Source of the DNA: Asterias rubens
Taxonomy: Eukaryota
Direction of reading: 5' to 3'
Length of the DNA: 64,000 nt
Assembly: GCF_902459465.1 (NCBI RefSeq)
Contig: NC_047080.1
Location: 11,842,001 to 11,906,000, forward strand
Translations under genes and position numbers: made by a program
Part shown: piece by piece, positions 19,721 to 64,000 of the stretch
Layout: every line of letters begins with the position of its first letter
Numbering within the stretch: position 1 is the first letter of the stretch
The notes under the pieces: generated by a model
Seen by the model: the letters and a program-made list of their open reading frames with translations, nothing else
Database searches by the model: none
What the model was told of the DNA's origin: nothing

Positions 19721-19852
19721 TTGGTGGCCTTCGACATTTGAAAGCGTGTTTTATAATTGCTGCTCAGGGACTTTTAGCGACGTATTGATTGTGTCACTAG
19801 GTAACAACTTCATTAGTTTGTGGCTTCCTGTCTTAAACGAAGGGCCACCAAA
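19721..19852. repeat. Short inverted-repeat element
   Basis: ttggtggccttcg ... cgaagggccaccaa. Confidence 0.5.
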
Positions 19853-42400: not shown

Positions 42401-45400
42401 GGTTAAACCCCCTCTAGCTGTTACAGTCGTAAACTCATTGCGTAGAACTTGCTTCAGATTTAGTAATTAAGCGTCCCTAGTTTCCCAAGACTTAAGGTTT
42501 TTTGGTCTTTGCCTGAAGTGATGATTTGATGATAATTTGGATTCATCCATACCTGAAGGGCTCATTCATTTCCAACATGGATGATGATATAATTAAAGTT
42601 CCAATTGAGCTAAGTTCCTGTATTAACTTACAGAAAGAATAACAAACTGAGATTCAGGAATACTATCTCCTTTAGGGATTGTGCACAATTTTAAAAACTA
42701 CCGTTACACTTACAGCTTTGACATTTTGTGTTCGTTTATGGTTTACATGTGAAATTGTGTGCGTATAGACGCATGCAACCTTACAATACAGTTGTACAAG
42801 TTTGGTTTGCGGGGTCCTCTTATTGTTATATTATTCCTTTTTAAAGGAATTCTTCTGTGGGTCCAAGTTGGAACAAGAAAGAATCTTGTGGAGGTCTTTA
42901 GTAAACCCCTTGCAGTGGTCGCCATCTTTGGTGAAACGTATGCAATCTATCATTGGTTGTAAGTCATGCGCAGCGCATACACAAGTGCACCGTTCCATTG
43001 ATGACCTCAGCGGTGGTGTCATATACACAAAGGGGTCTAAATCCGTAGGTTTTAATTGTAAATAAAAATAAAAATTTCAGGGGAAAAAATTCAGAAATAA
43101 ATTTTCTAATCATTGTGTCAAATTTTGATTGATCCAAAACAGTAATTAGTGCAAAGACGTAATCGACCAATCATACCTCGTTTCCTGGTCTCTGCTGCGG
43201 TTTTTGTTGTACAAACATAATACACAGTTTGCTACTTGTATGTATAATAACCACTGTTTGTTAGTCACTTAATTAGTGGACCAGTCTTGCGGCATTGGAA
43301 GATTGTTTGCCAAGCAGGGTCTGATTGCCTCCCCTGGAATTCAATGCAACCTCTGATTGTTCCGCTAGCGCTAAAAGCACATGCACAAGTTCCTTGCTTT
43401 TTCTGTGAATTACGCTTTTATTAAGCATTGAATGGTTTTCTACCGTTTAAGCACATCAAGCAGAGCCATTAAGTTTTTCCCAGGTACCAGCAGATGATGT
43501 ACAGTTTGATACATTTAGGCTGGCAACCGTTTTGGGTTTTGTAAATTCGTGTACATTTTTAGTGGGAGAGGGGAGGTAGAAAGTTTTGGATTTTTTTGGT
43601 CAACAAATTGACCTCTTCACCAACTGATTAACTGTAGACGTGAAACAAAACACAACCATATCCCATCAAATACCAATTGTGCTGGATGATAGTTCATGCT
43701 AAGCTTTTTTCTTCCTGCTCATCAACTTGTTGGCACAATTATCAGGATCATGATATCCAGCCCTAAGCTAAGGAAACCTGTGAGAGTAGGTAGAGGGCTT
43801 TAGGAAGCTAGATCCTGTAGTTAGTGCACTCAATCATGGTGCTCATTATTAGCACTTATCCAGACACCTGCAGCATCTATCCCCCTCTTGAGAAACCTAA
43901 AGTCTTCCATTTAATCCCTGCCTAATACATCAGCATCTTGACTCTACCGTCCTATTCAACATACTTAATTGAATCACACCGATTGCTTATATCATCTTGC
44001 CAGATTACTGGAGCCTGATGGGAAATCAGAGATTTCGGCCTATCGGATTACGACCATTCTCTTCTGTTGCCGAGGCCGAGAGGGTACGGGTATCAGTGAC
44101 TGCTTCGCATTCACCTGTGGCCATGGCAACCGTGACAGTCAGCTGTTCCAGTGTCACATCTTCAGATGTGAGGTTCCTGAAGCAGTAAGTTAAGATTCTT
44201 ATTTTCAAATATGGTTGATTTAAAATATTGTTTTAAAAGTTGTTGAAGCATAGTTTTCTATATAGAGCTTAAGGGCCTTGTCACACAAGGTAACTTTTAC
44301 AGGCAACTTGGAGGCAACCAACTAAAATGGTAAGTTTTTGAATTCAGTATTCACTGTGCTATTTTCTATTACAGGTGCAGCGAATCTTAACGTGTTTTGG
44401 CCAGGCATTCCATCGTGTACCCCGTAGCCCTGGTCTAGTGGACAGCATCCACGGTGCCATGCCAGCACCCAGGGAGACTCTAATGAGCTTCACCATCCCA
44501 GTCTTAGTTGACATCAGAGAGGAGGATGGTAAAGGAAACTTTGGAGCTGTGCCCAGAGATAAACGATGTTTCAAATTGAGACAAGGGGTGAAGAAAGAGG
44601 TGTTGGTGACGGTTCAGCAAACTCATCATCAAGTACTCAATATTGAAAGGTTGGTGTGGCAGGGTTCTCCTCATGCACAAGAGTAACGGGCCAATACCAG
44701 CAAATTTAAAGACAAATTTTGATTTCTTTTTTTTACAAAACCACTGAGAATGCTGCATATTGCGTTTGGGTTTTTAGAGACTTCAGACAGAAATTATTCT
44801 GAAAATCTCATTTCACTTCAGTGTCCTTTGGTCAAAATTAAAAAAACTGTGAAAGTTTAAATCGAGGTCGCAAGAAATTAGTTTAAATCATTTTTTTTAA
44901 TACTACTTTAAAACAAATTTTTGACTTTGGGATAAAACTAAGTATTTTATTAACTTTTGTTTAGGTGTTTTGGTCTTCTTATCAGCCCAGGAAGGGAGGT
45001 TCCAGACAGAGAGATGCACCTCTTAGATGTGGTAAGTCTTGTTTTACCTTTACGTGTTGGTATTACTCATTGCATCACATACATGCGTATCCGCTGCATG
45101 CCCAAAGTTTTTACTACTTTCAGCTCCAAAGATGGTCAACTTTTAATGAGTGACGTCAAATGCAAACAATCTAAACTTCATGGATGCGTCCTTGCAATAT
45201 AGACAGAGCAGAATAGTCAGTAACCTCTTTGCTTGTCACCTGCAAAAGAGGATTGTATTGTCGCATTAGTGCAAAAAAAGTTTATCTCCATTTTGCAAAA
45301 ACCCTGTATCTCGGCGCATACTTGCTTTGCGTGTGCAACCGGGCTATTTTAAGCGAGGTAGGACATTGCGGCAATTGCAAACTTGTGTGTATGTGCTATG

Positions 45401-48400
45401 TTTGGAGATGCAACACTTATGCTTTGACACAGCAATATTGTCCTTAAGTTTCAAAACTTACCTCTATGTTTTTAAGAATGATATCCTTTGAGGTAGAATA
45501 TTGTGATATTTTGTTTGCAGGTGAATCTTGAGACGAGTTCTGATTGTAAGAACTACACAGTCACTAGTATGTGGGATCCCAATAAGGCAGATCTTGAAGT
45601 ACTCAACACTGAATCTCCACCAGGATTAGGTAGGTCAACCACACCCACACTAACACCTTCTTCTCACACTGCCTATCTTTGATCTGTGTAATTGGAGACT
45701 TTTGTAAAAAGTCTGCTACATGGATTAAAACTAAATAAGAGATTCCTGTCACCCAACAATATCTAACCCAGAGAAAAGTTCAACCAGTTCCGTACTAACA
45801 CTGAAAATGGTGGGTTAACCCTAGCCCTGGGCAGGGTTAAATGTTACTCAGGCTAAGCCAGTTTTGAGTTTGTTAATCAGGATAATTTTTAGCCCTGACA
45901 AGTCTTGTGTGAGCGCTCCACTTATTCGGGAGAATCTCTGGGTTAAATTTTTCCTGTGAAAGGGGCTGTACAATTATGTCCTACGTTTCATGAGTTTTCA
46001 CCCATTTAAGCTTCTAAGATTTGATTCTTCATGTTTATGATTTTTGACCATGCCATTTTCAAAGATTGACTTCTGGAAATTGTTTGTGTTAACAAACCTC
46101 TTGCATTATTACATGCAATTATAGTGAAGTAGTTGGTGCTACACAACTCATGCAGTTTTGTATGTAATTAGTTAGTAACTGCTACTACTACCTACCTTGT
46201 TTCCGGCAACTATGTGTACGACTTACAAAATCTTCTCCAGCACAGTCTGTTGTTCCCAGTCAGCAATCGCATTCGCTAATTACAAAAGCAAACTCTGAAA
46301 GACAATGGAAGGACTTGCAACCAGTTTATTAAACTAAGTGCAAGCACCCAGTGATAACCGGTGCAAGCTGGATAGTGTAGTGAATTTCATTTGTTACTTT
46401 ACCTTTGAGGCATCTGTACAAACACTGTCCCTTTCTTGGAAGGACGTTCTGTTCATGGAGTTTATGACCTGAAAGCTCATATTCTACAAAATTAGAACTG
46501 TTGGCAACATTTCAAAATCTGACCTAGAAGAAAAAAACGTGAAATTTTCTTTTTGGATCACTATTGGCAATCCAGTTCCGGCAGGATTTGACAGTAGCTT
46601 TACCTGTGTACATGGTAAGTGATTTACCGCACGATGATTTACTTGGTGAAAAGTACGTTGTCTGAAATATGAATGTTAGGAGCTGATCACATCCCCCTCC
46701 CCTGCATCCCCCGCTCTCCTGCTTTACCCTTCCTGTTCCCCAGGGCATGGTGCTGGGCCCTTAATGGTCAATCCTCCATCCTCCAACCCACACCTTCATT
46801 GCTTCATTGTTCACCTTTTTCTCGTTCCTTAAGCATGTTCAATATCTTTGGGATTAGGTATGCAGATCTGTTAATCCCTCAATTGTCTTTAAACCACCTC
46901 CAGTTATAATATTTGAGTAAACACTCAAATAATTCTCGTCTGGTTCCCTTCGCAGATAAAGGCATGTTTATGACCATAGCTGTGGATCTTGTCATCACTG
47001 GTATCCAGGAGCCAGTTCGTTTTGTGGTTGAGACCAAAGTGCGTATTTTCCCATCCACGGAGAAATTCTGGTATTTCAACAAGAAACCTGTTCAGGAATT
47101 CTTCTATCTCATGCTGGAAGAGGTAGGTTGAGAAAGGAACGTTGTCGGCACTCATCAAGAAAATAAAAATTGACTAAAATGTTTCATTCCAGGCCTGAGA
47201 AGAAAACAAAATTGTATTTCAATCTCCCATATTTTGATTTGTTTTTAGCATTTAAGCATTCAAATAAAAAATTGATTGAAGTGAAAATTTCTAGCAAATA
47301 TTGACTTCTATATTTTCTTGTTAACATTTTCCTGAAGACGATCAGAACATCCTGATCAAAACAGTGAGTCGTTAACCACCGTTTTTTTTCAGAACCAACA
47401 CTACTCAAAAGAGATATTCACATGGTGTTACCGCAAACCTCTCTTAAACACCTTGTTTTTAAGCAGCTTGAAGTCACAGTAAGACCAAACTAACAAATCA
47501 CAAACATTTCACTCCAATGTGCGTTTATCTTGTACCAGATTGAAGCTGCTGTTGAGAATGAGCCAGCGTATGCCGTACTGACTCTAGAGAGTGAATCCCA
47601 ACGAGAGAGGAGAAGGATACCAACACGCTCACCAAGCACTAACCTTGTACAAACACCTGACAGTATGACATCAGTCGCAGAGGAAGAAAGTGGTAACTAA
47701 TTTATTCATTAAATATTATTACCAAAATAAATAGTAAGTCTGGGGCCCAATTTGATGGCTCTGCTAACCTCAGAATTCTGCACTTACAATCACTATTCGC
47801 TGCTTACCTGCAAGCGCCGACTTTCTGCGCTAGCCTTGTAAGCGTAGAATGCCTATAGTAACGTGTACGCATGTGCAGAAGCCAAAATTCGCCACTTACC
47901 CGTGAACTATGCTTGCCGTAAGCACAGAATTCCCTGCTTCCATAAGCGCCGATTCTGTGCTTACGGTAAGCAGAGCCATGAAACGGAACCCAGTTGTCTT
48001 TATTATAATAATACCAATATTCTTGCCAAAGTATTCCTTAACTCTTCTTTCACCAGAGGTTTTCTTTAACGATTTCCTTACAATACTGTTTCTCTTCCCT
48101 TACAAAAAATTTTTCTTTAACTCTTCCCTTACCAAAGTTTCAATAACTCTCTAATTTGCAAGGTATTCCCTTTCTCTATCCTTATTAAAGTACTAATTAC
48201 CTCTTTGTTTACCAAAGTTAATCCCAAATGCTGCCCTCACCAAACATTTTCTCTGGTAAGGGACTAAGGGGCACCTATATGATGAATAATTCAATTTGTT
48301 TTGGAACTTTGCAAAGGGCACCAGAGTAAAAGCACAGTACCACAGCAATTCTGGGGGTGCTATGTGTCATTTCCAGGCCTGGCTTTGTTTCTTGGGAATG

Positions 48401-48761
48401 TCTACCTGTAGACACTGAGGATTTTTACAAAATATTTTTGTCTTTTGAACAAAGAGAAGATGACCTGACATGCTAGAGCGGGATTTACGGTTGCTTTTTA
48501 TTTATTTTTACTCCAGATGATGATGAGCCTCTGCAGAGTGGATCCGGCAACGTTGACAAGGACTGTGAGGAAAGTATCCTATTGAATTGGGGAGACCTCC
48601 TGGCTAAATGGCGTTCCAATCTCAGTGTCCGCCCCAAACATCTCCGCTCGATGGTCCGCAAGGGTATTCCTGAAGCCCTACGGGGTGAGGTTTGGCAGCT
48701 CCTGGCTGGGGTTAAAGAGTGTGAGGACCTGATGGAAGAATACCGTGTTCTTATCACGAAG
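30436..48761 (+). CDS. RABGAP1: Rab GTPase-activating protein 1 / 1-like (PTB domain, kinesin-associated-type domain, start of TBC domain); 5' partial, continues beyond the window
   Basis: Coding exons 30436-30946, 33935-34145, 44004-44184, 44375-44649, 44965-45031, 45521-45629, 46956-47122, 47539-47692, 48517-48761 (640 codons, phases consistent). Motifs: IIYLGAASVNAPKSE, LFQCHIFRCE, CFKLRQG, ERCFGLLISPGR, FMTIAVDLVITGIQEPVRFVVETKVR, DEPLQSGSGNVDKDC, KGIPEALRGEVWQLLAG. I did not find the next expected exon (RDINRTFP-like) before 64000. Confidence 0.95.
32416..32735. repeat. Most abundant dispersed repeat family in the window (gggcac/ggtgccc-rich)
   Basis: cctggaatttcatctttga...gggcaaggccattttcattt.gcaaagggca recurs at about 60820-60925. 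Related pieces at about 6222-6280, 40232-40520, 42205-42320, 48300-48382 and 58130-58240. Confidence 0.7.
34626..34945. repeat. Tandem duplication, about 2 x 165 bp
   Basis: ttggttatttcctccc.tggcactggagttgctatgtcaa starts at both 34626 and 34791. Confidence 0.85.
35968..36048. repeat. Dispersed repeat fragment, also at about 48910-49032
   Basis: Shared aggttaccagccaaa.taccatgt.acatgtacaa...ctggtatcctg. Confidence 0.65.
47741..47985. mobile_element. MITE-like foldback element
   Basis: Imperfect inverted ends (ggcccaatttgatggctctgcta / aagcagagccatgaaacggaaccc) and internal gcttac/gtaagc repeats. Confidence 0.6.
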
Positions 48762-50890
48762 GTAAGTTCTTTCAAGTTATTTATGGACCCATTTTCACAG
48801 AGTTGCTCATGAACAAAAAGGTGCATAACACAAGTAAGGTTTGCGGTGACACCATATAAAATCTTTTAGTGAGTGGTGGTGGGTCTGAGAGAATTATGCT
48901 TACCAGAGTTAGGTTACCAGCCAAAATACCATGTCACATGTACAAATTGTGACTGGTATCCTGCTAAATTTCTGCTAAGCGGAAAATTTTTAGGTAGCAA
49001 TTTCTGATTCAGCAGCTTTGTGAAATTGGCCCTGGTCATGTTTTTCCCACATCAATTTTGAAATATATGCCATATGGTTTGTCAAAGTTATCTTGGCAAT
49101 AGGTGACACAACGCAGCAGGTGGAGTTGGCTTAAATTTACCCCTTCCCTGCTCCCTATCCCTCTTGCTGTTCCTGTTCCCCTTCTGTCCTCCTACCCCGC
49201 CCACCCATCATCTTGCCCCCTATACACTCCACTCCATCCCTTGTACAGATCAACAAGCACACCATTCAACTTTGACTCTAAACAATTTTTGAAATAAGTT
49301 CTCATAATATTAATGATCTACTTCTCAAAAATGTATAATTTCTAAAATTGAAATCCAAATACTTTCTGTCTTTTTGACCTAGTAAGATACTGTGTCATGG
49401 TTAGCCTCCATTGAACAATTCAATGTGTTGTACAACTCAAGTGAAAAGAGCCCTCTATTGATCATTGGTTCAAGATTTAATGAGAAGTGACAGTTAATTG
49501 AGTGTGGCGCCCTCTTTTGAATGAGACTGTTGTGAGAATTAATTTTCTATGGCTCTGTGTTTTGCTCTGAGGTTCTAGATTTTTGAACTCTGAATTGACA
49601 GTTTCAATACTGCATTTAAAATGTATGAACAGCGTTAGTGCAATGAAATACTTTCATTGAAGAAAGTCGCTGTCACACAAAATTCTGATGAAAAGAAAAT
49701 GTAGCGAACTTGAAGACAGATTCTTTGACCATCTCATCCACAGACAATTCATAAATCTATTTGGATATTTGCCATGATAATTTATTTTTTAAATAGACAG
49801 TGATTATGTACATTTATACATAATAATATAATTAAAAGTGTCCCACATAAAATCTTTACAATTACTTTCATTTTTAACAACATACTGTTTATGTAGTCAT
49901 CAATTTAATATTAAACAATCTTGGTTGCATAACATCAAACTCTCATCTTTGTAAAAACAAATTTAAGTGTGTCAAGTGATAATTTACAAGCCACCAGGTT
50001 TGGGTCGTCTCCAAGAAAAGAACAAATCCCATTTTAAATTTTAGTGTCAAAACAAAATCCCAATGGATAGTACGACACTTTCAGATAATTCTCTTATGCC
50101 ATCCAAGTGAAACAAATTTGTGTACTACACACCTTTTATAGACCACGTTACAGGATAGATAATGTCAAGTGTGACATGGCCCAAATAATACATTAATAAC
50201 ATTATATTCAGGTCAATAATCTCCAAGGTTTTTCTTCAATTCTTCCAATTCTCCATTTGCCTTAAAATTCCAGCATATAAGAAGTGAAGGAGCCATTAGG
50301 GAAAGCTGGGAGCTCTTGAAATATCTCGTGGCTGAGTCCAAGATTTAGTTTTCTTTATTTGTGATGATTCAGAGAGTTTGATAACCATGGAAATGTAACT
50401 TACAAGATGATCGTGAACCTTTTCCCATTAGTCCATGAGACTAAAGGGACACCTGTGTCAAGTTTATTTACTTTGTTAAGTTTGCATCTTTTTTGTACAA
50501 ACAACATTAATGGTGCCAGATTTACTTGTAAACAAGGGCCAAAGTTTTTTTTAGTTTTTTTTTATCCTTTTGTGGTCAATGACACTTGATATGAAAAAAA
50601 ACAGTTGTAATAAATGCAATCTGTCAATGCATTTTTCCTGCTAATTCCCTGACCGTGTCTTTTTGCCATCAAAATCCATTTTGACTTAAAAAAAAAAAAA
50701 AAAATCTTATTTTGTGAAAAAAATACATCTTTCAATAAACATGCCTGTAGTACTTAGTAAAATATTTTATCTCAGTACTTAATAAATTCATCTCTGTTAC
50801 AGTTTCATAACCAAGTTTGTTACATAAATTTGTTAAATTTCAAACCAAAAATACTTCAGAACCAGATCTCTTTTATTAGGTAGTCTAAGA

Positions 50891-51955
50891 TTAACAGTCC
50901 GTCACAGAAAGATCCTGTAGCTGCATCACCTGACTTTGTGAACGTTCCCTGCTCTTAGAGAAGCAAAGATCCTTACATGTTTTACATACTGAGGTTATGC
51001 CACGCCAACATGACCTTAGCATCAAGTAGAACCCCTCACGGAATGATCGATGTCCGATGATATAGATGATGCAGTTAAGAAAACTATTTAAGAATCCCAG
51101 CCATGCTGTCAAGAAGCTGACCACTGGATTCACCTGGACTTGACATGTGACTTCGATGATCTTCTGAATCACAAAGGGTATCCAGGAAAAGTAGAAAGCA
51201 CTGATTACGATAAGAAACATCTTAGCTAGCATCCGCTCGTAGATTCTTGTGGTTGTGTCTTGAGTGTCTGGCTCGTGAAACAGCGTCTCTAATCGCTCAA
51301 TGTGTCTAGTTTGTGCCAGGCAAGCATGTAGGATGTGATAGTAGCAGAAAATAGATATAATGAGTGAAGGAATAATGAGGATGCAAATCATGCAAAATGA
51401 CACTTGTAAACTTTTGTCGAAAGTTACCTTGCAGTCATTGCTTTGAGCAAATCCACCCCAACCAAACATGGCTGGTAGAAATATGAGTAAAACTAAAATC
51501 CATACAATCAAAGCGTAGATGCGAGCTCGGCGTTTAGTCACGATGGATTTATATTTCAGCGGTTTAATGATTGCGATGTAACGATCGATGCTTACACATG
51601 TTAAGCTCAATATAGATACAGCGACCATAACAGCTAGGAGGTACCCCATGAGCTTACAGGACCACATCTCATGGGGCCAATCGGTAGCCCACTGGGATTG
51701 TGTCGCGATCAAGACACAAACACCAACCCCCAGATCGGCCACGGCTAACGAGCGAACAAATACACCTGTCATGTTCTCCAATGTCTTCATATATTGGAAC
51801 ACTATCAAGACAATGATGTTTGCTGATATAGTTAAGATGGAGGTGAGAAGTAATGTTACCCTAGCCAACTCAGCATTCAAACCAACACTGTCTGTGACTT
51901 GCGTTACATTTGTAACATTATCATAGTACATGTATGAGTACAGTGTCTCGGCCAT
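50891..51955 (-). CDS. GPR21/GPR52: Intronless class A GPCR, GPR21/GPR52-like, 354 aa, nested antisense in a RABGAP1 intron
   Basis: ATG-initiated ORF with 7 hydrophobic segments and N-terminal NVT sequons. Blocks resembling GPR21/52: ISANIIVLIVF, ADLGVGV, SLTCVSIDRYIAIIKPLKY, FLPAMFGWG, SFLTAWL, and NSFLNCIIY (the NPxxY-to-NCxxY change typical of GPR21/52). Confidence 0.88.
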   Translation of the reverse strand: MAETLYSYMYYDNVTNVTQVTDSVGLNAELARVTLLLTSILTISANIIVLIVFQYMKTLENMTGVFVRSLAVADLGVGVCVLIATQSQWATDWPHEMWSCKLMGYLLAVMVAVSILSLTCVSIDRYIAIIKPLKYKSIVTKRRARIYALIVWILVLLIFLPAMFGWGGFAQSNDCKVTFDKSLQVSFCMICILIIPSLIISIFCYYHILHACLAQTRHIERLETLFHEPDTQDTTTRIYERMLAKMFLIVISAFYFSWIPFVIQKIIEVTCQVQVNPVVSFLTAWLGFLNSFLNCIIYIIGHRSFREGFYLMLRSCWRGITSVCKTCKDLCFSKSRERSQSQVMQLQDLSVTDC

Positions 51956-54900
51956 TGTTAAAAGTTTTTAAATTAATTCTTAGGACAATTTCACTTGATT
52001 TTCCTTTTTGAGATATGCCGGTTCTCAGCTGTTATGTTGTACTTCATTGATGTCAAAATGAGAATAAGTCGAGTTGTTTTCATGGGAGTGACCAAACCAG
52101 TATATTGTTGTGTATCCCTTACAGTTTAATTCACCACACCAGAGTTCAAATATTGGTTAAAGTTCTCTGCATTATGTAGTGTTCATAAATTAGCTCTGAT
52201 TCCAGCCAAAAGCTGGTGGCGCTATACCGTTTTTACGCCAACAGCATCAAGAGATCCTAGCAGTTTACAATTATTTGGGAATGTAGAGTTTTGTGAGTTT
52301 TGTTTTACTGATTGTTGTCCTTCACATGAATTAATTGTTACTCAATACACTGTTCATCTCTAGCGGGACGTCAAACACAAGATCTAAATGCTCATTTGTT
52401 TCATGTAGATGAAGTCCAACTGATGAGTGGTTCTATCAGAGTCAATACACTTGTCATCTCATCGATTGATAGATGACTAGAGTTATTTGAACGGATGCTC
52501 CCCGTAGGGAAGGCTGCTGTGATGTCAGCCTGCCACACTCATCCAGGATATGTAGTTCCACAGATCAAACAAAAATTAATTTAGTTTCTGAAACATGCAA
52601 AGGGGAGGGAGTTTGTTCATATAAAGAGGTTAGTGTGAATGAAGGCGTAACATGGTTCGCTGGTAATAATAGCTTGTGATGGATGACTTGTTTGCACTGA
52701 CAATTTGCCTTCCATCTGTTTTCATCAGGAACAATTTATAAGTGTCTCTTCATTCTGGCTTGATCATTATGTGAAACAAAATACTATAGTTTCGGAGGTT
52801 TGTTAATAGTTCAACATTCAATGGACGGCAAAAGATTTTCAGATTGGCTGCCTCAGAGCTGTAATTGACAAGTGAATTGCTCAGCGGTGATTTGATTGAA
52901 CAATAATCATATTTGTTTGATGATTTTCATTTCAAGAGGTTCAAATAAAAGCAAGAAATTGTCAAAATGATTTCCTAGACACAAAATGGTTCAGGGTATC
53001 AAATATATTCCTTCTGTTCAAAAACTGCTTCAAGTGTTGCTTATTTAGCGTTATTCCACTGTGCTAGTCCACGCTCCTTATAATAGCATTTCATCCAATT
53101 ATTACATTTGCTTGGTGATTTTCATTTTAAAAAGTTCCAATGATAACAAGAAATCCTCGTAATGATTTCTGAGACACGGAGCTGTTCATGATTTTCCTTC
53201 TGCCTCTACTGCTTCCACTGTTGCTTATTTAGCGATATATTTCATCCTATATAATCATGACTACATCAATAGAGCTGTTATGCGATCCAGAAAGGAGGTT
53301 TCCTCCTATAGTTTCCCTATTATCTCCTCTGTATTTACATTCCTTGTTTTCTTTACCTTGTGCTGATTTCCCGAGTGTTTTTGTTGTTGGTAAATTAGAT
53401 TACTGTACATCCAGAGATGAGGAGTTGAGTTATTGCCCTTCGTCCTCCTCTCTCCTCCTCTTTGTGGTAAACAACACTCATCCTACACTACTTTAATTCT
53501 AACTTTATATCTGTTTGTTCCCCGGGACGTGACTTTCTAACAAGAACTGCGCAATAATGATAGAATCTTCAAATCTACCCGATGGTCATCTTTGACCTAT
53601 CCTCAGTACCTGTAAGATAACGTTTCACAGTGGTCAGCCCTGGAGTGAAAAACACTACAGGCTCCGAGGCTGTACTGTATTCCTCTGTTATTAAATTAAG
53701 TTTTCTGGATGTAGATGGTTGTATTTAAACAGTATGTGCATCTTACTCATTGGTCTTGACTTGTTGTCCCATTTGTCCTGTCCTCAGATATCTTCAATGC
53801 TTGGCGTTTCTGATTATTTCTAGTCAAGCATGGTTCAACAGCTTTCCATTAGTGTTCTTTCTATTGGTTTACCGTGATTTCACCCACTTCCGTTGAAAGA
53901 CTGAGTCTAAAAGTAGGAACAATGTTTGATCACTTAATTGTTTGCAACTCCAAGGCGAATCATTCACACCTCATTATCAAAGTTCAATTGTCACCCGATG
54001 GGCTTTGCTGAAGTCGGCCATGCGGTGAGATCTTGTATCTACTGCAGTCAGTGTGGATTTCACACAGAAGTATTGACGTATTTCCTGTTGTGCTGGTAAT
54101 TGAGTTTGTTATTCAGGTTTATTCTTTCAGGTTGCATCGTTTAGGTCATGTTTGCCGAGTTGATTTGTTCTGTAACTGCTCTGTATGAAGACGAATTGGG
54201 AATCCCATTCCGAGAGTCGTAGCTGATTATTCTGATAAAACAGCGACTTGCAAAAGTAGAAGTCTTTAAGATTTGCAGCATTTTTTCCCAAATGATTTAT
54301 TGTTTCATGTGTCACATTCACTCTGTTTGTTTCTTCACCTATGTATATCGCTTCCTTGTTGCCATTTAGTATTTGGGTGAACAAGTCATCTTTCAATATG
54401 ATAGAGTAGACTAGTAATCCTTTTGACATCCAGTTCCAAAAATTGTTGAAGAAATGAGGTTCTCTTCAAAAATGAGGTTCTCTTCAAAAATGTTGCACAT
54501 TTTCCTTTTAGCGGTTGAAATTTTCACACTTGTCCCAATTCTTATACGTCACAGTTGTTGCCAGCAATCTGATCGTTCAGATGGAAAAATAATCTACGTT
54601 CCACATGAGTGTTTGTTTTATTGCCGTGTCCGAGCTACTTTACAAGCAGTCGTCTGTCGCGCATAAATCAACCGAAAGTCAAAGCGTAGCAGGGCTGGTT
54701 TGTCCGGTGATCCTCACGATTCTTGCAATTAGCACTCCCTCTCTCTTGTAATACTTAGCAATCACTCCGCAACGTGGTGTAACCATGGTAACTCATCAGG
54801 GAGTTCTTGGCAACGTAACGGTGCAACTTCTCCAATTGAAGTATGGTGAGACTGGTTCCCTGTGTTGTTGTGATAGATGCAGTGCCGTACATGTGATATT

Positions 54901-55324
54901 CAGTCTCATCAGGGATTGGCACCAGTCTGATCAGTCATCACTCCTGCATTATGGTAGAAATCAACCAAGATATGGAATAATTAGGATTTCATGTGAAATA
55001 AATCAATATTACATTTGTAATGACTCAGACGGCTACTAGAATCAAAAGTTGTTAAAATCTTATTGACATATTGATTTTAAAACCACAGCTGAACTGATTT
55101 TTTTCCAAAATGTCATGCATAATCTCTGTATTTTAAACTCAATTCAGCTTGTAGCTATGATGTTTGAATGTTTTTTAATAAACCAAACCGATAATAATTA
55201 TAAGTTCCAAATAAAGCGCTCAGACAGAAAGTCCTTGGCTAATCTGTACTAAAAAAAATAATAATGGTGATTTATTTAGCAAGGTTAATGCATAGAATTA
55301 TACTGGTCATAATAGTTTCTGGGG

Positions 55325-55485
55325 TTGACTTGCGAGCAAGGATAATTCATGAATTAATTTAAACAATTTTTTTTATCTTGGATTGACTTGAGAGCAAGGA
55401 TAATTCATGAATTAATTTAAACAATTTTTTTTTATCTTGGATTGACTTGCGAGCAACGATAATTAATTCATGGATTAATTCAACA
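55325..55485. repeat. Minisatellite, about 2.8 x 58-59 bp
   Basis: ttgacttg.gagcaa.gataattcatgaattaatttaaacaatttttttt.atcttgga at 55325, 55383 and 55442. Confidence 0.85.
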
Positions 55486-58400
55486 CTATTATTTTTATGT
55501 ATCATTTAACCAGCATACTGAAGTTTCTGCTTGCGGGATTAGCCAAACAACTGTTTTCTGCTGTTGGAATAAGAATCTGAATAGTTTTGCTTAAACACAG
55601 TCAAATAAGCGTTTTAACCGCCAGAAAACAAGGAATGCACACTTTTAAATGAAAATAAATTTATTTAGTTTTTACCTACAGGAAACAAGGAATGTACACT
55701 TTTTTATGAAAATATTTTTTTTTTTACATGTATTGTCCAAAAAGCTGTTGGATATTTTTATTTAGAAAAAAATACATATATTTGGTACTGCCACAGTGTC
55801 ACTTTAGGATAGACTCAACTTCAAATGTCCGCTTTATTACGTATTCACCTCGTTCCATGCAATTCGATACATCACTATGTTCATGAACATTTCCATTTCC
55901 ACTTATCCATCAATCAGAAACAAAAAGAACGACATGAATTCATAGAAAAACAAAATAACTGATCATGGCCTGAATCTTACTTTGCTTTTACTTAGAGCAG
56001 TGAAATAAAACCATTCAGTTCATGTTCACCTGTCATCTTTAATTGATAGTAATTCCACAAACCCCACCCCTTCAGTCAATGCTTTTGAAGCAGGTTGTTT
56101 ATTTCCATAGCTTTTTCAGGTGGGGACAGAGATACATAATAGATCCTGCTGGCTACGTGTAAACTCTCTACTGATAATGACTAGGGTAGATGGCCTTAGC
56201 TTTCGATCCAAACCGGACCTTCTGTATGTAAACCGCAGGGGAAACTGACTCTGTACATTTAATATTATTTGGGACGTAACCCTAAGTGATTGTATGATTA
56301 AATTTGAACAATTATACTTAAGGCGGTTCTTTATAAAAGCACATCGCCAAGAGGCCCCTATGCATAAGAGAAAAGAAATCAATTAATGAAAACTATAGTT
56401 AAAATATATATTTTTAGTTGGTTAGTAGTTTCAGCCAGTTCAACTTGTGTAGGTTAGTCATTGCAGAACTTCATAGCAGAACCTTGAAAGAGCTCCCCTT
56501 GAAAAGAGCAAGACCCATTCAATGAAGTTGCCCTAAACAACTGATTCTACTACCAGTATTTATTTTTACACCTTATTAATTAACCATTTTATCGTATAAT
56601 TTATTGAGCATGAATTTTCATCTGTCACGATCCCAGATGTTCTTATGGTGAACTTCTTCCGAAGTTATTTGCAACATCTTTGTTTGTGTTTCACAAGAGG
56701 CAGGTTTACAATGCAATAAATATGTCATTGGTAATTGAATAAGGAAATAGATGCTCTGGTTTTTCTTGTAAGTGGGTCCCTTGAGAATGGGTTGGTTGAG
56801 AGACACTTAAGAATTCCTAACTCAATATTATAATTGAGGACTTTCTTTGAAATTCTTGAATGGTCCTTCAGCCAAATATGACCGCTTATTATTTGCGATG
56901 AAAACAGATCAGTAGACTGAGCAAAAACAAGATTTAATTGAGAACCTCAGGATGGGATGGAGTCCCATTATCTGTGAGAATGCTGAAGATGAATTAGATA
57001 AGGGGTAGGGAGAGTTTATCAAATTCTTGTTGTTACATTTTGAAGATTGATCTGAAAAGGAGATGTACATTTACCTTAAGAGAATGGCCTGCGTGTATCG
57101 TAGTTTTCATATTGATGGCTTTTTAAAGGATTTTGATACCTTTTGTAGATCAAGTTGTTGGCCATGACATGAATCCCTACTCACAGTGAATGAAGATATA
57201 TGTAAATTACTACAAAAAATGTCATTGTCTCAATTACTTTAATAATTAAATCACTACAGTAACCTGTTAGTAATATTTTGCAGTTTTAAACTAAATCAGT
57301 TATTAAAGAAATGAGTACAAAATTAAGAACTTTTTGTTAATATCCCCCCTCCCTCCCCCAACAAGGGAAAAAAAATGAATAAATAAAAAATTACTTAGTT
57401 TATAATCAGTTTTGTTATTTCACCATGGTCTTGGCAAGTAATTTATTTCAAAGTGAATGAAATTTCTATTCACCTGTGAAGGCAGTGTCGTTTAGTATTA
57501 GTGTGTCATAATTGTGGTTGGCGTTTGAGTGATGGCCACGCTAAATTAATTTGAAATAATGGTCGACAAAGGGCGGCAGGAAACCCTGTTCACCAAGCTG
57601 TGTCCATAATTCATCTTAATTGTCAGTCCTTATTGTGGACTTGACTGCTTCTATTGAAGATCTTGAAGAAACAGTTCCCTTCTGAGGTCATTTTATTTGA
57701 TTGAATAAGAACATTTTACCAACTGAACATCTCCAGGTCTAGAAATAATGATCAGCATCTGGAGTTATGAGTATTATATCAATATTTTATATGCACAATA
57801 ATATATGCACAATATACTATAAAACTGCCTTTTATGAGATACTTACAATGTAAATTTGCATGTTATGTTTATGTAATTCAGAATCCAGCACAGGGTAATG
57901 CCAGCATGACTTTACGATTTTCCCAGAGATGCCTCAATCTTAGAATGACCTGATCTTATCAGACGCAGCGTGATTCAAAAAGATTTGAGCATCAACAAGA
58001 CACTAAAGAGAAAGGCTGCACCATCTTAATTATCATCTTACTCAGACTGTATTTATTGATGACCTTATCAGACGTACTTTTTGGAGGATTGTTAATGCAA
58101 GAAGTTTGTTGGGAGGTGCTGTAAAAATTTGTTGTCCAGGCCTCAAATTAACCCACAGCACCCACAGCAATTGCTGCCAAGGTGCCCTGTGCTTTTGCTG
58201 GGGTGCCCTTTGCAAATTTTCCTCATGGAAGTGCTCCTTGCCAGAGGAAAATCTACTTCAAGAGCAAACTCTAAAGCCTTATTGTGTTTTGTGTACAGAC
58301 GGTGATGACGACATCTTAGATGTTTTTCTCAGGATGATGTTATTGAAGTTTATAGAGTTGTCTGTTGGCTATAAACTGATAAAGAGACTTCTATTCCCAT

Positions 58401-59859
58401 GGTGTCATCAATAAGTTCCATGCCAAGGGAGCAATAAACGCCTTTCCTATCAACACATGGTCGTCTCACTTCGGTTGACATATGACTGCAAGCAATCATC
58501 ATTGCATATGTTGTCATTTATCGCTGCTTTTCACTTTGGAGTTCCTGTGATGGGAATTCACTTGGATTATTGCTCTATGAACCGTAGTGATCTGTTAATG
58601 CACAATTGTTGAGAGAAATCTTACTTGTCTGAAATGGACGGTATGAGATGCTGTTTCTGTAAGACATCTAAGTGATATATTTAATTTTTTGTTTCTTAAT
58701 TTCTCAATTACTTTAAGGGCTTTAACAATAAAACATACAAATATTACCTCAGATATTCCAGATGAGATAGCCCAAGACTAAATTCCTAACAATTATTAAG
58801 GAATTTCATGTATTAACATATTCGGACATCTCTGAAACAAAAATTGTTCAAAACAAAAATTGAAAAGAATAAATCTTGTAAGAAGTGTGGTTGATATTTG
58901 AAGTAGAGTTCAAGAATCCTCCAGGGTGTTATCCAGCTTAGTGGTAGTGTGAAGGGTTGTTTCAAGACGTCATCTCGGGAGCCTCCAATGGGTCGCTTTC
59001 CAGCTTTGAGGAATCTAGTCTGAAAAATAGTTTACCTCCTAGGGACAAACATCTGCCTAGTAGTGTCAGCTTGGAATTATTGGTGCTTTTTCTGACATGT
59101 TTCAGTAAACAGCTTTTTTCACTTAGTTGATTGGAAAGGTGAATTATGATGGGGGGGGGGGGTCCCCCAAGCTACACTCAAGTAAATATAACAGTCTATT
59201 TTAGTTGTTTACAAAGTGAACACTTTGCAGCATGAAAAAGAACTAATCAGATAGAAGAAATAAATCAGGTTTTTTTCCTGGAGCAGAATTTAAAAACTCA
59301 CAAAAGTTGTCAAAGCCTGTTTGTCATGAAGTAAACTTTTTTAAATCTTCGAAAATCAGATTTCTTTATATTCCCTGCTTCATCTGTGAATGTAACATTG
59401 TATATGTCCTTCCACCATCTGCATATCAAATGTTAACATATGTTAAGATATGTTAAGGTTGTAGCCACTGTTATAGTTCACGATCCTAATCATCCGGTCG
59501 CAGTCTTTCATTTAAGTGTTTTCTGCCAGCTAACATTTTAACGAGGAGTCATTGGACGTTGCTTCGGTATGGACGGACGCTATGCTGATGTATAAAATGA
59601 TTTATGTTTAGTCTGCTGTTATATAATTGGGAGGTGGCAGTGCCTGGCTTGTGGTAAAACCTTCCTAAGTTGCTATGCACAGTTGTCAGGAAAGCAATCA
59701 AACCTAAGATTCTTTGTTTTTATCGTCCGAGAGTGTATGTGTAGGGACAATTACACCCAAAGAGAATGGGATAGACGGAAAACCACAGAACTTCTACGAA
59801 AGATATGTATGGAAAGGTTTGGGGTAACACCATGTACTAAAGACTTATGAGTGTAACAT

Positions 59860-59980
59860 CTTGTGGTCAAGCGGTCTTGATCATGGAACTAAAGGTCTGA
59901 TGGTTTAGTCATTAGAGTGGTGGTTTGAATTGAATGCTCTCTTGGCACTTCCGTTCTTTGGCAAGACACTTAACCATATT
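59860..59980 (+). mobile_element. Degenerate tRNA-derived SINE
   Basis: tgtggtcaagcgg...gtggtttgaatt head followed by a ttggcaagacacttaacc core. Confidence 0.45.
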
Positions 59981-61703
59981 CACTTCCCATCACCCAGGAT
60001 TAATTTATCGGGTACCTGTTAGGGTAGAGATTGTTGAATGATTAGCAACCTGTGCGCCATTTTGGCTTCCGGTGCTGCATACTCCGAAGGAGTTGAGATG
60101 GTTTCAGGAAAGCATAAGACCCAATGAACAGTGCAAATAATAAGGTAAAGCACTTTTAATACAAAATTAAAAAGCACATAATAAACACTTTGCCACAAAA
60201 TAATTGCTAAAGGCCTCACATTTTGAACATCGGAGTCTTTCTTATTTTTATGTAAGATTCTTTTCTCTGTGATAACCCAGATATTTTTTACCAAAATGCC
60301 TTTGTAGCCACCAGCCTCTACTTACACTTAATTTGGGTAGTGAGAAAAGGTTATTAAGAGTTGAAGATACCAATCTCTAGTTGTGTGCCTAGAAACTGAG
60401 AAATGTGACTTGAAGCACAGGAATCTCAGTAGGGTAAGGTCTTTGTTTGAATAAAGAAACTGCTTGCATTAATCATTCCTTAAGATCAGAGGCAAAGATA
60501 TAATGGTTCTCTCAATCAGTGTAGCTGGAGGAAAAGCCTAGTGACCTACAAACATGAAATATCAAATATAATACTTCAACGTTACGCAGAGTACAGAAAA
60601 CCAACAACTGCTCAGTGACAATCTTTTAATTATTAGCTGCACGTCATCGCTTAATGAGGAGGTACGTACAGGTGACAATACTGCTGCAACTGACAATCTT
60701 ACTTTCCCTGAATCAGGAGCAGCTTGGTTTTGTTTTCTCTGAGGTATGCAAATATCCTCTTTGAATCCAAATATGGTGAAGGTTGCATAATATTGTTTGC
60801 TGCTCCCAGTATTTTTGAGGCCTGGAATTTCATCTTTGAGAGGGCAAGGCCATTTTCATTTTGCAAAGGGCAGTTCCACTGACCAGGGCAACAGATGCCT
60901 TTGCCTCCATGGCCTCTGTATTAATTCAAGGCATGATGTTGACTCACTTTGAATCAAGGTACTTGACTCACTTAGAGTCTAGGTACAGCATTGGTAATAG
61001 TAACCTTGTCCAAACCTGCTTCGTTTGTACGAGGTTGAAAAACCTCAAAAAACCATGCTTCGACCCCATGGTATCAAGTACTGTTATGTACCGTGTGCAG
61101 TACATGACTGTATCTATGCAGTTCGTCTTCCCAACGCGCTATACAGGGTGAATTCAGAGTGGGCCGTGCTATGCGTAAACAAGGCTGGACAAGGCTATGG
61201 TAATAGCAGTGGCAGTAGGTTTGAACACCGACCAGGCATGTTTACGATATGTTTTTACGATGTCCCCCTTATAAGCTCAACTACTCATGCAAGCATGTCG
61301 TGTGCATTCACGTGTTAACACCAATCAACCTCTCATTGACTACCTCATATTATATTCATTATTTCAAGCAACCGTACCGTACTGTACAGGAAATTAAATA
61401 GTACCACAAACACACACGCACTGTAAATGAACCCATGCCTTAAGCCAACATTTCCACACTACATACCAATATCGGTCGATTCAACCAATCGTCTTAATTC
61501 AGAGGTGGAATTAAACCAAGTCAAGATTGTACAGGAATTTGTTGTGAGTTTGGAAACTTTTAAAGCTCCTATTATTCCAATGTCTATTCGAAGGCTCTCA
61601 AAGTTGTCTTTAGTAGTTGCTTATTATTGCATGGAATATTGGCAGCTGACTCCACACCTCCAAGCGCCTACTATTTTAAACACAACTGGAAACATCCAGC
61701 CTT

Positions 61704-62085
61704 TAAGCCAGTGGACACTTGGTAATTGTCAAAGACCAGTCTTCTCACTTGGTGTATCTCAACATATGCATAAAATAACAAACCTGTGAAAATTTGAGCT
61801 TGATTGGTCGTCGGAGTTGCGAGATAACTAAGAAAGAAAAAAACACCCTTGTCACACGAAGTTGTGTGCTTTCAGATGCTTGATTTCGAGACTTCAAATT
61901 TTACACTTGAGGTCTCAAAATCAAATTCGTGGAAAAATACTTCTTTCTCGAAAACTACTCCACTTCAGAGGGAGCCGTTTCTCACAATGTTTTATACTAC
62001 CAACCTATCCCCATTACTCGTTACCAGATAAGGTTTTATGCTAATAATTAGTTACGTAATTACCGATAGTGTCCACTGCCTTTAA
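61704..62085. mobile_element. MITE, same family as 26164-26549, copy 2
   Basis: Colinear similarity along the whole length (ggtaattgtcaaagaccagtcttctcact...cagagggagccgtttctcacaat...gtgtccactgcctttaa). Confidence 0.8.
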
Positions 62086-62487
62086 CCAACCCGTAGAATT
62101 AAAACAACTTCAAAATAGCTGTTGCTCTGGAAAACACTTCTCCCTGAACCAACAACTGTTTTTATTGATTCTGTTGGTTATTCATTGAAGTGGTGCATGC
62201 TGTACTTGGACTTTAAAATATTGTAGCACATTGATCGCAGTGTGTTCCACTTTAATTTCATGTGTCACTCTGAAATTGTAGACGGCAACAGAATGCTAGG
62301 ATCTTCGATTATAGACTAATAATTGGTTTGGAAAGGTATCACTTTTCAAAAATTGGGGGAAATTATTCATGCACTGTGGTATTGAAGTTAGACTTTTCCA
62401 GCCAGCAATATGATATCATGTGGTGCATCTGTACAGCACACATGTAGTTAGTTCTTTTTACAATGGTCAAGTGGTTAGAATTCAGCC

Positions 62488-62662
62488 ATCGATTTCACAA
62501 AACTCTTCCTAACTTAGGATTAATCTTATGACTTAATCTTATGACTAGTCCCAACCCTGCACTGTAGCATGTAAACCTTAAGATTAATCCTAAGTTAGGA
62601 CGAGTTACTCGTCCTAATTCGAGATAAGACGAGTCCTAACTCTTTGTTAAATCGATGGCTGG
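62488..62662. mobile_element. Short MITE with TIRs
   Basis: cagccatcgatttcacaaaa ... ctttgttaaatcgatggctg. Confidence 0.7.
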
Positions 62663-62847
62663 ACTTGCAATCACAAGGTTGTGGGTTCGAATCTGACCAT
62701 CCTAACCGCTGATTTCACCATGACTATAATAAACATTGCTTCTCTCTGCTTATCCCACATTGAACCCACATCAAAGTATGTTATTTGTATTCACAACTTT
62801 TCCCAAGAAATTCTCCAGTAGTGTACAAATGTAATTTTAACAACCCT

Positions 62848-62918
62848 GAGGAAATAAGTACAGTTATTTTGTAAGAAGGCCCAGAGGAAATAAGTACAGT
62901 TATTTTGTAAGAAGGCAT
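62848..62918. repeat. Direct tandem duplication, about 2 x 36 bp
   Basis: gaggaaataagtacagttattttgtaagaaggc occurs twice. Confidence 0.8.
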
Positions 62919-64000
62919 TTTTTTTCCCATCAAACTCTTTCAGTCAGAAAATTTTAAGAAATAAATTTATACTTTACCCTGTAAATGTTCACGTCTCATC
63001 AGATGTCTAACCAGTCAGAACAAATTTGTCCGCAATTATTGTTGAGTATAAGCTTCTGATTAATGGTGTGCGGCCGGTCAGAGCAATTTATATTTACAAC
63101 AAACTGTCAGTTGAAATAAATAGAGTAGCTGTGCAGTAGAGACATGTCTCTTGACTCAAAGGCTGCTCGCAAAATGTCAATATCTCTCTCGCCTCACAGC
63201 TGATAGTCCAGAATAGGAGAAATCCAGCCTCTAACTGAAAATGGAATAACCCGGCTGAAACTTATCGGTTGAAAAGTGCCATATAGCAGATTGTTCCATT
63301 TCTAAATAGGGATGTGTTGTCTGGAGGGGAATTTTGTTATGTCAGAAGTGGATAAGCCAAATTCATATTTCCCGTTAATGCAAATGTTAAGCAATATTTG
63401 TTATCGCAAACAATCAACTTCTAACCAACTGTGATATTTACCTATTATATTAACCCATATCCTTATAATCTGTTTGGCTGTAGGACTCTGATTTTAAAAT
63501 AGCAGTTAAATCCATCAAACTGTTTGTCTGAAACGAGTAAACATATTGACACAGTTGTTGAAAATGAAATTGAATTTGAAGTTTTACGTTAAAAGGAAGG
63601 TTCTTGTTTGGTAATTACTCAAAACAAATATTAACTTAAAAACTGACTTGGTAACGAGCATTGGACAGCTGTTGATAGTATAAAACATTGTGGGAAACGA
63701 CTCCCTCTGAAGTAATGTAGTTTCTCACGAAAATAATAAAAGACTGGTCTTTGACAATTGCCAAACATGTACCTTCCCTTTAAGTACACTGCACATGGAG
63801 CGTGTTTTGTCTCTTTCGGACTATGTGTGTTTGTTTTGATGTAAACATATTGGACTATTTACATTTTATTTTCCTCGCCTATGACGTATATGTTAATCTG
63901 TCTACGGTCCACAATTGAGACCACATTAGCATTTTAAAGGATTATTAATAATATACATGTTTGGTACCTTATTTGATACCTCATTGTAAGAGGGTTGATA

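What the first reader, a model, noticed from the sequence alone, without database searches (positions are those of the whole stretch)
48762..64000. GPR21/GPR52-like receptor nested in the same RABGAP1 intron as in vertebrates, but apparently on the opposite strand
Seen: the only long ORF in the over-15-kb intron after '...EEYRVLITK' is an intronless GPCR (50891-51955, -) with GPR21/52 signatures (SLTCVSIDRYIAIIKPLKY, FLPAMFGWG, NCIIY). Known: human GPR21 and GPR52 are intronless genes nested in large introns of RABGAP1 and RABGAP1L. From memory, they sit after the equivalent '...YRILITK' exon and on the same strand as the host. Inference: the nesting predates vertebrate genome duplication and is probably at least deuterostome-ancestral, and one lineage inverted the receptor without moving it. 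That suggests a retained regulatory dependence on this intron, and here creates a sense-antisense pair.
Basis: partly seen in the sequence, partly recalled or inferred. Interest (0 to 1): 0.85.

Follow-up and report, generated by a model that had tools for sequence, protein, structure and literature searches.

The report
Antisense GPR21/52 receptor inside RABGAP1 intron
A sea-star gene for an orphan brain-type receptor (the counterpart of human GPR21/GPR52) sits in the same intron of the RABGAP1 gene as in fish and amphioxus but flipped onto the opposite strand, so this gene-within-a-gene arrangement dates back to the deuterostome ancestor and survived one inversion.

Summary
An intact, intronless 354-aa class-A GPCR (50891-51955, minus strand) lies 2.1 kb downstream of a plus-strand RABGAP1 exon that ends '...EEYRVLITK|gt' at 48761. 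No further host exon follows before the window ends, so the intron is at least 15.2 kb.

The receptor is a true GPR21/GPR52 orthologue. Its best solved relatives are GPR52 and GPR21. In a tree rooted on amine receptors, echinoderm and chordate sequences form one clade with 100/99 support. dN/dS against A. amurensis is 0.12.

Annotated loci show the same antisense nesting in five other echinoderms spanning four classes. In amphioxus and two teleosts the receptor is nested on the host's own strand. In a pipefish it lies between the '...LITK' exon and the arginine-finger exon, which are adjacent in the protein (residues 63|64 of PDB 4nc6), so it is the same phase-0 intron.

The nesting is therefore deuterostome-ancestral, with one inversion. 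Which lineage flipped is unresolved: the hemichordate and nemertean 'GPR52-like' genes are paralogues and are not nested in RABGAP1.

A regulatory dependence on the intron is not shown. I found no conserved non-coding sequence and no receptor-specific RNA signal.

The parts
50891..51955 (-). Intronless ORF (354 aa plus stop) for a GPR21/GPR52-orthologous class-A GPCR
   Evidence: dN/dS is 0.12 against A. amurensis, and the ORF is 97% identical versus 91-94% for the flanking intron.
48516..48761 (+). RABGAP1 exon A (start of the TBC domain), ending ...EEYRVLITK with a phase-0 donor AAG|gtaagt
   Evidence: sequence. (PDB 4nc6 residues 2-63, E 9.7e-22). (spliced RNA contigs cover exactly 48516-48761).
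48762..64000 (+). 5' part of the RABGAP1 intron that hosts the receptor. It is at least 15,239 bp and the next exon (arginine-finger exon) lies beyond the window.
   Evidence: No TBC finger motifs or TBC tblastn hits. No Rfam family. No Ns.
46955..47125 (+). RABGAP1 exon segment (C-terminal end of DUF3694)
   Evidence: Colinear tblastx with pipefish RABGAP1. Pfam DUF3694 at E 1.1e-06.
44489..44650 (+). RABGAP1 exon segment (start of DUF3694)
   Evidence: Pfam DUF3694 at E 7.6e-06.
44002..44136 (+). RABGAP1 exon segment supported by homology
   Evidence: tblastx against pipefish and other echinoderm loci.
44963..45043 (+). RABGAP1 exon segment supported by homology
45536..45625 (+). RABGAP1 exon segment supported by homology
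33988..34083 (+). Upstream RABGAP1 exon segment (PID region), supported by homology
   Evidence: tblastx against pipefish L011:662-757.

Best explanation
The ORF at 50891-51955 (-) is the sea-star orthologue of vertebrate GPR21/GPR52, an intronless orphan class-A GPCR kept under purifying selection. It lies in the phase-0 intron of RABGAP1 that separates the '...LITK' exon from the arginine-finger exon of the TBC domain. This is the same intron that holds GPR21 in teleosts and the single GPR21/52 gene in amphioxus.

The receptor entered this intron once, in or before the last common ancestor of echinoderms and chordates, and has stayed there since. One inversion confined to the intron happened either on the chordate stem or on the echinoderm/ambulacrarian stem. 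As a result chordates carry the receptor on the host's strand and all echinoderms carry it antisense, with its 3' end facing the upstream exon.

Shown here: orthology, the same intron, the opposite orientations, coding constraint, and splicing of the host exon.

Inferred: a single origin plus an inversion; that the echinoderm receptor uses its own promoter, because it cannot be processed from the host pre-mRNA; and that retention reflects entrapment inside a host gene that cannot be broken, shared regulation, or both. By analogy with its solved relatives the protein would be a Gs-coupled, largely self-activating receptor, but that was not tested.
For: Identity:
- Pfam 7tm_1 at E 5.6e-45.
- PDB best hits GPR52 at 1.7e-49 and GPR21 at 1.1e-43, with the next family at 1e-29.
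- Only 12 proteins at E<1e-30 among 1.84 billion representatives.
- In the careful ML tree rooted on amine receptors, the echinoderm clade has 99/97 support, the chordate clade 100/99, and the two together 100/99 (the quick tree agrees).
- Shared motifs FGWG, the ECL2 Cys, DRY..KPLxY and NSFxNCxIY.

Constraint: dN/dS 0.12; the ORF is 97% identical versus 91-94% for intron. 15 of the 16 listed differences fall on third codon positions.

Antisense nesting in a PID+DUF3694+RabGAP-TBC gene: A. amurensis, Patiria, Diadema, Amphiura and Antedon. The same exon A lies 2.1-4.8 kb from the receptor's 3' end in four of them and in the window.

Sense nesting: Sardina, Syngnathus, B. floridae, and the literature for Gpr52 and Gpr21.

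Same intron:
- Pipefish exon A ends at L011:5571, GPR21 is at 10001-11218 and exon B starts at about 16571.
- Exons A and B are adjacent at residues 63|64 of 4nc6.
- The amphioxus chimeric model reads from the receptor C-terminus into 'ESPCEQVIQRDINRTFP'.
Against: - The host's next exon is not in the window. Nesting in this genome is therefore inferred from the incomplete TBC domain, the spliced donor, and the annotation of the 98%-identical A. amurensis locus.
- No run showed receptor RNA above intron background, and no stranded data were available.
- The direction of the inversion is unknown. The hemichordate genes named GPR52-like are paralogues and are not nested.
- The GPR52/RABGAP1L intron was not mapped here.
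- In amphioxus the intron assignment rests on an old chimeric gene model plus the RefSeq nesting. Exon coordinates were not seen within 10 kb either side.
Confidence: 0.85

Rival explanations
1. Independent insertions. Intronless copies of the receptor (for example retrocopies) landed separately in the same large RABGAP1 intron in the chordate and echinoderm lineages, in opposite orientations. On this reading no inversion occurred and the nesting is not ancestral.
For: The gene is intronless in every lineage. The intron is a large target, at least 15 kb. Echinoderms did produce a dispersed second copy on another chromosome (P0285, P0014), so the gene can duplicate to new sites.
Against: It would need two hits in one specific phase-0 intron out of a whole genome. 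From the sizes alone, a target of roughly 20-30 kb in a genome of hundreds of Mb gives a chance of about 1e-4 for the second hit. The nested copies, not the dispersed ones, are the ones shared by all echinoderm classes, including the crinoid. No un-nested orthologue was found in amphioxus or fish.
Confidence: 0.07
2. The ORF is a GPR21/52-like paralogue or amine-type receptor that merely happens to lie in RABGAP1. On this reading the resemblance to the vertebrate nesting is coincidental.
For: A paralogous sister family exists, many of whose members are also auto-named 'GPR52-like' or 'GPR21' (hemichordates, nemerteans, amphioxus, a crinoid, a scallop). Asterias ECL2 is shortened and lacks the vertebrate KPGYHGD stretch.
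Against: The tree separates the nested echinoderm genes plus chordate GPR21/52 from that sister family with 100/99 support. Crinoids and amphioxus have one member in each family, which proves paralogy between the families rather than within the nested set. Synteny agrees with the tree.
Confidence: 0.04
3. Assembly or annotation artefact. On this reading the orientation in the window is a local mis-assembly, or the ORF is an unexpressed relic inside the intron.
For: RNA contig depth over the ORF (about 7-10) is no higher than over the surrounding intron (about 6-10) in the runs examined.
Against: Six independent echinoderm assemblies give the same orientation and the same neighbouring exon. dN/dS of 0.12 and an intact ORF across four echinoderm classes (asteroids, an echinoid, an ophiuroid and a crinoid) rule out a relic. 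A marine metatranscriptome holds a piece of the ORF but not the host exon (X3 record 20).
Confidence: 0.02

Closest known systems
Vertebrate GPR52 nested in RABGAP1L (Yao et al. 2015, eLife, PMC4372774)
   Same: An intronless orphan GPCR of the same orthology group, inside an intron of the GAP-domain part of a RABGAP1-family gene. The two genes are reported to be functionally linked (Rab39B/huntingtin).
   Different: In vertebrates the receptor is in the same orientation as the host, from human to zebrafish. Here it is antisense. The authors' idea that the receptor mRNA might be processed out of the host intron cannot apply to the echinoderm arrangement. The exact RABGAP1L intron was not mapped here.
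Vertebrate GPR21 nested in RABGAP1 (mouse exons 13-14, PMC4813635; teleost loci L010 and L011)
   Same: The same host gene and the same phase-0 intron between the '...LITK' exon and the arginine-finger exon. Intronless receptor.
   Different: Sense orientation in vertebrates. In teleosts exon A is additionally split by a small extra intron. The sea-star receptor has a shorter ECL2 without the vertebrate KPGYHGD stretch.
Amphioxus GPR21/52 in RABGAP1 (XP model P0284; chimeric model C3Y2J7, P0319)
   Same: A single pre-duplication orthologue, intronless (403 aa), nested in RABGAP1 upstream of the arginine-finger exon.
   Different: Same strand as the host, as in vertebrates. As far as my literature searches reach, this has not been described.
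Other deeply conserved nested gene pairs, e.g. TIMP inside synapsin (my own knowledge; PMC2825198 surfaced but was not read)
   Same: A small gene held inside an intron of a larger host over hundreds of millions of years. An antisense orientation is common for such pairs.
   Different: In the present pair the orientation differs between phyla while the intron is the same. That separates 'staying in the intron' from 'keeping the orientation'.

Membership tests
GPR21/GPR52 subfamily of class-A GPCRs | Rhodopsin-type 7TM domain | tested here: met
   Pfam 7tm_1 at E 5.6e-45, residues 46-298.
GPR21/GPR52 subfamily of class-A GPCRs | Groups with vertebrate GPR21/GPR52 to the exclusion of amine and other receptors | tested here: met
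   Echinoderm plus chordate clade at 100/99, rooted on 14 amine-type receptors. The PDB ranking puts GPR52 and GPR21 about 20 orders of magnitude ahead of H2/beta-adrenergic receptors. Labelled insect DopEcR was not included.
GPR21/GPR52 subfamily of class-A GPCRs | Single-exon coding sequence | tested here: met
   Uninterrupted 354-codon ORF. The same holds in amphioxus and in the other echinoderm loci.
GPR21/GPR52 subfamily of class-A GPCRs | Nested in the RABGAP1-family intron between the '...LITK' exon and the arginine-finger exon | tested here: met
   Window. Pipefish. Amphioxus. Five echinoderms.
GPR21/GPR52 subfamily of class-A GPCRs | Same transcriptional orientation as the host (the vertebrate state) | tested here: not met
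   The receptor is on the minus strand and the host on the plus strand in the window. It is antisense in all echinoderms. This is a feature of the chordate arrangement, not of the protein family.
GPR21/GPR52 subfamily of class-A GPCRs | ECL2 that fills the orthosteric pocket as a built-in agonist (known from the GPR52 structures; my own knowledge) | tested here: inconclusive
   The TM4-end FGWG and the ECL2 Cys are invariant. The Asterias loop is 3-4 residues shorter and lacks the vertebrate KPGYHGD stretch. No structure was predicted.
GPR21/GPR52 subfamily of class-A GPCRs | Gs coupling with high constitutive activity | not testable with these tools
   Needs a cAMP assay of the expressed receptor.
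RABGAP1 (host gene) | PID/PTB + DUF3694 + RabGAP-TBC architecture | tested here: met
   The window holds DUF3694 exon pieces and the TBC N-terminal exon. The annotated host in the 98%-identical A. amurensis locus and in four other echinoderms has PID+DUF3694+RabGAP-TBC at 1006-1127 aa. The TBC catalytic exons lie outside the window.

The most novel reading that the evidence does not exclude
The receptor and the RabGAP are held together by an orientation-independent functional coupling, for example shared enhancers or one chromatin domain that balances cAMP-driven Rab activation against its GAP, as proposed for Gpr52/Rabgap1l. On this reading the echinoderm inversion is a natural experiment showing that the coupling needs co-location in this intron but not co-transcription.
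Probability: 0.2. Interest if true: 0.7.

Novelty: new variant of a known kind. Interest (0 to 1): 0.55.

Why it matters
The nesting of GPR52 in RABGAP1L and of GPR21 in RABGAP1 has so far been treated as a vertebrate feature. It has practical consequences: Gpr21 knockouts disturbed Rabgap1 (PMC4813635), and Gpr52 and Rabgap1l show epistasis in huntingtin control (PMC4372774).

Showing that the same intron has housed this receptor since before echinoderms and chordates split, and that orientation flipped once without the gene leaving, adds three things. It dates the pair to the deuterostome ancestor. It rules out host-intron processing or read-through as a universal requirement. It also offers echinoderms as a comparison system for asking whether co-location reflects shared regulation or mere entrapment.

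Separately, it sorts invertebrate genes auto-named 'GPR52-like' into true orthologues (echinoderms, amphioxus) and a paralogous family (hemichordates, nemerteans, molluscs).

Tried and rejected
- **Saccoglossus and Glandiceps 'GPR52-like' genes as hemichordate outgroups.** Neither is nested in an annotated gene, and the trees put them in a paralogous sister family. They cannot polarise the inversion.
- **Lineus 'GPR21'.** It is one of four intronless GPCRs inside a proline-rich repeat gene and also belongs to the sister family.
- **P0020 (693 aa) as a possible host-receptor fusion.** It is only a tandem GPCR fusion.
- **Cross-locus tblastx and tblastn for RABGAP1 exons within 10 kb either side of the receptor in Sardina, Diadema, amphioxus, Saccoglossus, Glandiceps and Lineus.** No hits. 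Absence is uninformative, because the annotated hosts in Sardina, Diadema and amphioxus span the whole locus anyway.
- **Conserved non-coding elements in the intron.** blastn of Asterias against Patiria, Diadema, Amphiura, Antedon, amphioxus and pipefish found only the ORF itself.
- **RNA evidence for the receptor.** Contig depth over the ORF equals intron background. Contigs carry no strand information. The one 'joint' near the ORF (52122/52351, ends AG..AC) is not a canonical intron and looks like an indel between species.
- **Rfam on the intron.** Nothing.
- **Literature searches for a prior report of invertebrate nesting.** None found. The library lacks most subscription journals.
- **** failed because of my own coordinate slip and was corrected.
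Full report
**Observation.** Between 48000 and 64000 the only ORF longer than 120 aa is 50891-51955 on the minus strand, at 354 aa. It carries the quoted motifs and is a rhodopsin-type 7TM protein: Pfam 7tm_1 at E 5.6e-45, residues 46-298. On the plus strand an exon ends ...EEYRVLITK at 48761 and is followed by gtaagt. The exon is 83 codons in frame, so the intron is phase 0. RNA contigs from two sea-star data sets cover exactly 48516-48761 inside much longer contigs at depth about 155-166, so this exon is spliced at that donor (records 7 and 21). The exon matches the first 63 residues of the solved human RABGAP1 TBC domain (4nc6, E 9.7e-22) and RABGAP1L (3hzj, E 4.1e-20). Upstream plus-strand segments are colinear with pipefish RABGAP1 exons, and two of them hit DUF3694. 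Downstream of 48761 there is no arginine-finger or glutamine-finger TBC exon on either strand and no tblastn match to an amphioxus RABGAP1 TBC region. There are no Ns. The TBC domain is therefore unfinished at 48761, and the intron extends at least 15,239 bp to the window's end with the receptor 2,130 bp into it.

**What the receptor is.** Against all PDB chains the best matches are GPR52 (1.7e-49) and GPR21 (1.1e-43). The next family (histamine H2, beta-adrenergic) starts at 1.6e-29. The nearest database protein is 'GPR52-like' of Asterias amurensis at 98% identity. Orthologues follow in Patiria, Acanthaster, Diadema, Amphiura and Antedon. An exhaustive HMMER search of 1.84 billion cluster representatives gave only 12 proteins at E<1e-30. 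By name these are echinoderms, a teleost GPR21, hagfish GPR52-like, amphioxus, Saccoglossus and a nemertean, plus one teleost tandem-GPCR model that is irrelevant here.

**Phylogeny.** A quick 84-row tree and a careful 48-row tree (IQ-TREE, LG+C20, rooted on 14 amine-type receptors) agree. The echinoderm sequences form a clade (99/97). Amphioxus plus vertebrate GPR21/52 form a clade (100/99). The two together form a clade at 100/99. The Saccoglossus, Glandiceps and nemertean 'GPR52-like/GPR21' proteins fall in a separate sister group (94/93). That group also contains a crinoid, an amphioxus and a scallop protein. Because crinoids and amphioxus have one member in each group, the sister group is a paralogous family. 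Family motifs are invariant from crinoid to hagfish: FGWG at the end of TM4, the ECL2 cysteine, DRY..KPLxY and NSFxNCxIY.

**Coding constraint.** The gene is under purifying selection. dN/dS is 0.12 against A. amurensis (dS 0.074). The ORF is 97% identical against 91-94% for the surrounding intron. Of the 16 listed differences to a related species' contig, 15 are on third codon positions of the minus-strand frame.

**Nesting and orientation in other genomes.** Loci fetched around the exact annotated proteins give the following.

- **Echinoderms.** The receptor lies inside, and antisense to, a gene whose product has PID + DUF3694 + RabGAP-TBC domains and is 1006-1127 aa. This holds in A. amurensis, Patiria miniata, Diadema antillarum (two near-identical contigs), Amphiura filiformis and Antedon mediterranea, covering asteroids, an echinoid, an ophiuroid and a crinoid. 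In four of them the same exon A (…YRVLITK, or …YRRLIVK in the crinoid) lies 2.4-4.8 kb beyond the receptor's stop codon, as in the window. In Diadema it is more than 10 kb away.
- **Chordates.** Teleost GPR21 is nested on the same strand as RABGAP1 in Sardina and Syngnathus. Branchiostoma floridae P0284 (403 aa, intronless) is nested on the same strand in a 1078-aa DUF3694 + RabGAP-TBC gene.
- **Literature.** Gpr52 lies in a Rabgap1l intron 'in the same orientation' from human to zebrafish (PMC4372774). Mouse Gpr21 lies between Rabgap1 exons 13 and 14 on the same positive strand (PMC4813635).

**Same intron.** In the compact pipefish locus the RABGAP1 exons are colinear with the sea-star exons, up to an exon ending …EEYRTLITK at L011:5571. 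GPR21 is at 10001-11218. The next TBC exon, ESPQDSAITRDINRTFP…, begins at about 16571. On human RABGAP1 (4nc6) exon A ends at residue 63 and exon B aligns from residue 65, with one more codon (E) in front of the stretch I submitted. So the exons abut, and no coding exon can lie between them. The sea-star donor is at the identical codon. In amphioxus an old chimeric model (C3Y2J7) runs from the receptor's C-terminus through spurious filler into ESPCEQVIQRDINRTFP…. This places the receptor immediately upstream of the same exon B on the same strand. The GPR52/RABGAP1L intron was not mapped here.

**Interpretation.** The simplest history is one entry of the receptor into this intron before echinoderms and chordates diverged, retention ever since, and a single inversion within the intron. 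That inversion happened either on the chordate stem or on the echinoderm (or ambulacrarian) stem. The direction cannot be told. No true orthologue was found in hemichordates or protostomes, and the hemichordate paralogues are not nested in any annotated gene. Independent insertion into the same intron is the main rival and is improbable on target size alone. The finding that the copy shared by all echinoderm classes is the nested one, while the second echinoderm paralogue (P0014, P0285, on another chromosome) branches inside the echinoderm clade after crinoids, also favours an ancestral nested state.

**What is not supported.** blastn between Asterias and Patiria or more distant loci finds only the ORF conserved, and entrapment inside a host gene that cannot be broken is an equally good explanation. 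Because the receptor lies wholly in an intron, the 'sense-antisense pair' concerns the host pre-mRNA only. In the RNA data sets examined, contig depth over the ORF (7-10) equals that over the intron (6-10). The contigs are unstranded, so receptor transcription is not demonstrated there. The only hint is a marine metatranscriptome that holds a 246-nt piece of the ORF (one mismatch) but nothing of exon A.

**What does follow.** In echinoderms the receptor must have its own promoter. The idea that Gpr52 mRNA could be cut from the host intron (PMC4372774) cannot be a conserved requirement.

**Novelty.** The receptors are already auto-annotated as GPR52-like or GPR21 in several invertebrate genomes, and the vertebrate nesting is published. 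I found no paper describing invertebrate orthologues, the amphioxus or echinoderm nesting, or the orientation flip. The searchable library is incomplete, however. I rate this a new variant of a known arrangement. It is of moderate interest, chiefly for people studying nested genes, ancient microsynteny or GPR21/52 biology.

Noticed in passing
window 48892-48967: A very high-copy repeat sits about 130 bp downstream of the exon A donor. RNA-contig word depth jumps to 16,000-24,000 there, with many loose ends and back-joints. It is probably a short interspersed or foldback element.
   Followed up: no
P0285 (A. amurensis, different chromosome), P0014 (Diadema), P0015, P0017: Echinoderms carry a second, dispersed GPR21/52 paralogue that branches inside the echinoderm clade after the crinoid split (96/91). 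The asteroid copy is on a very long branch.
   Followed up: partly
L009 (Lineus longissimus) 618-1835 +, 7331-8368 +, 10553-11578 +, 17479-18483 -: Four intronless GPCRs of the paralogous 'GPR52-like' sister family are nested, in both orientations, in an intron of a 1369-aa proline-rich-repeat gene that has no Pfam domain on record.
   Followed up: partly
L008:10810-12021 (B. belcheri); P0019; P0319: The B. belcheri protein KAI8518634, named 'Rab GTPase-activating protein 1', is really a mis-spliced GPR21/52 receptor. The intact 403-aa ORF is intronless. B. floridae C3Y2J7 is a chimera of the receptor's C-terminus and the RABGAP1 TBC domain.
   Followed up: yes
window about 51407-51466 (ECL2 of the receptor): Asterias ECL2 is 3-4 residues shorter than in Patiria, other echinoderms and chordates, and lacks the vertebrate KPGYHGD stretch. 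FGWG and the ECL2 cysteine are kept. This agrees with the scan's separate note on that motif.
   Followed up: partly
L011:5298-5428 (Syngnathus acus): In the teleost the exon homologous to sea-star exon A is split by an extra short intron after '...WGDLLSKW'. This is an intron gain or loss difference between the lineages.
   Followed up: no
window 52122-52351 and 53721-53828: Contigs of a related Asterias species skip 228 bp and replace 106 bp here. These are indel differences between species in the intron upstream of the receptor, not canonical splice junctions.
   Followed up: no
L003 and L004 (Diadema antillarum): Two contigs carry near-identical copies of the whole 21-kb locus, with one 3.1-kb insertion difference. 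They are most likely unmerged haplotypes rather than a duplication.
   Followed up: no
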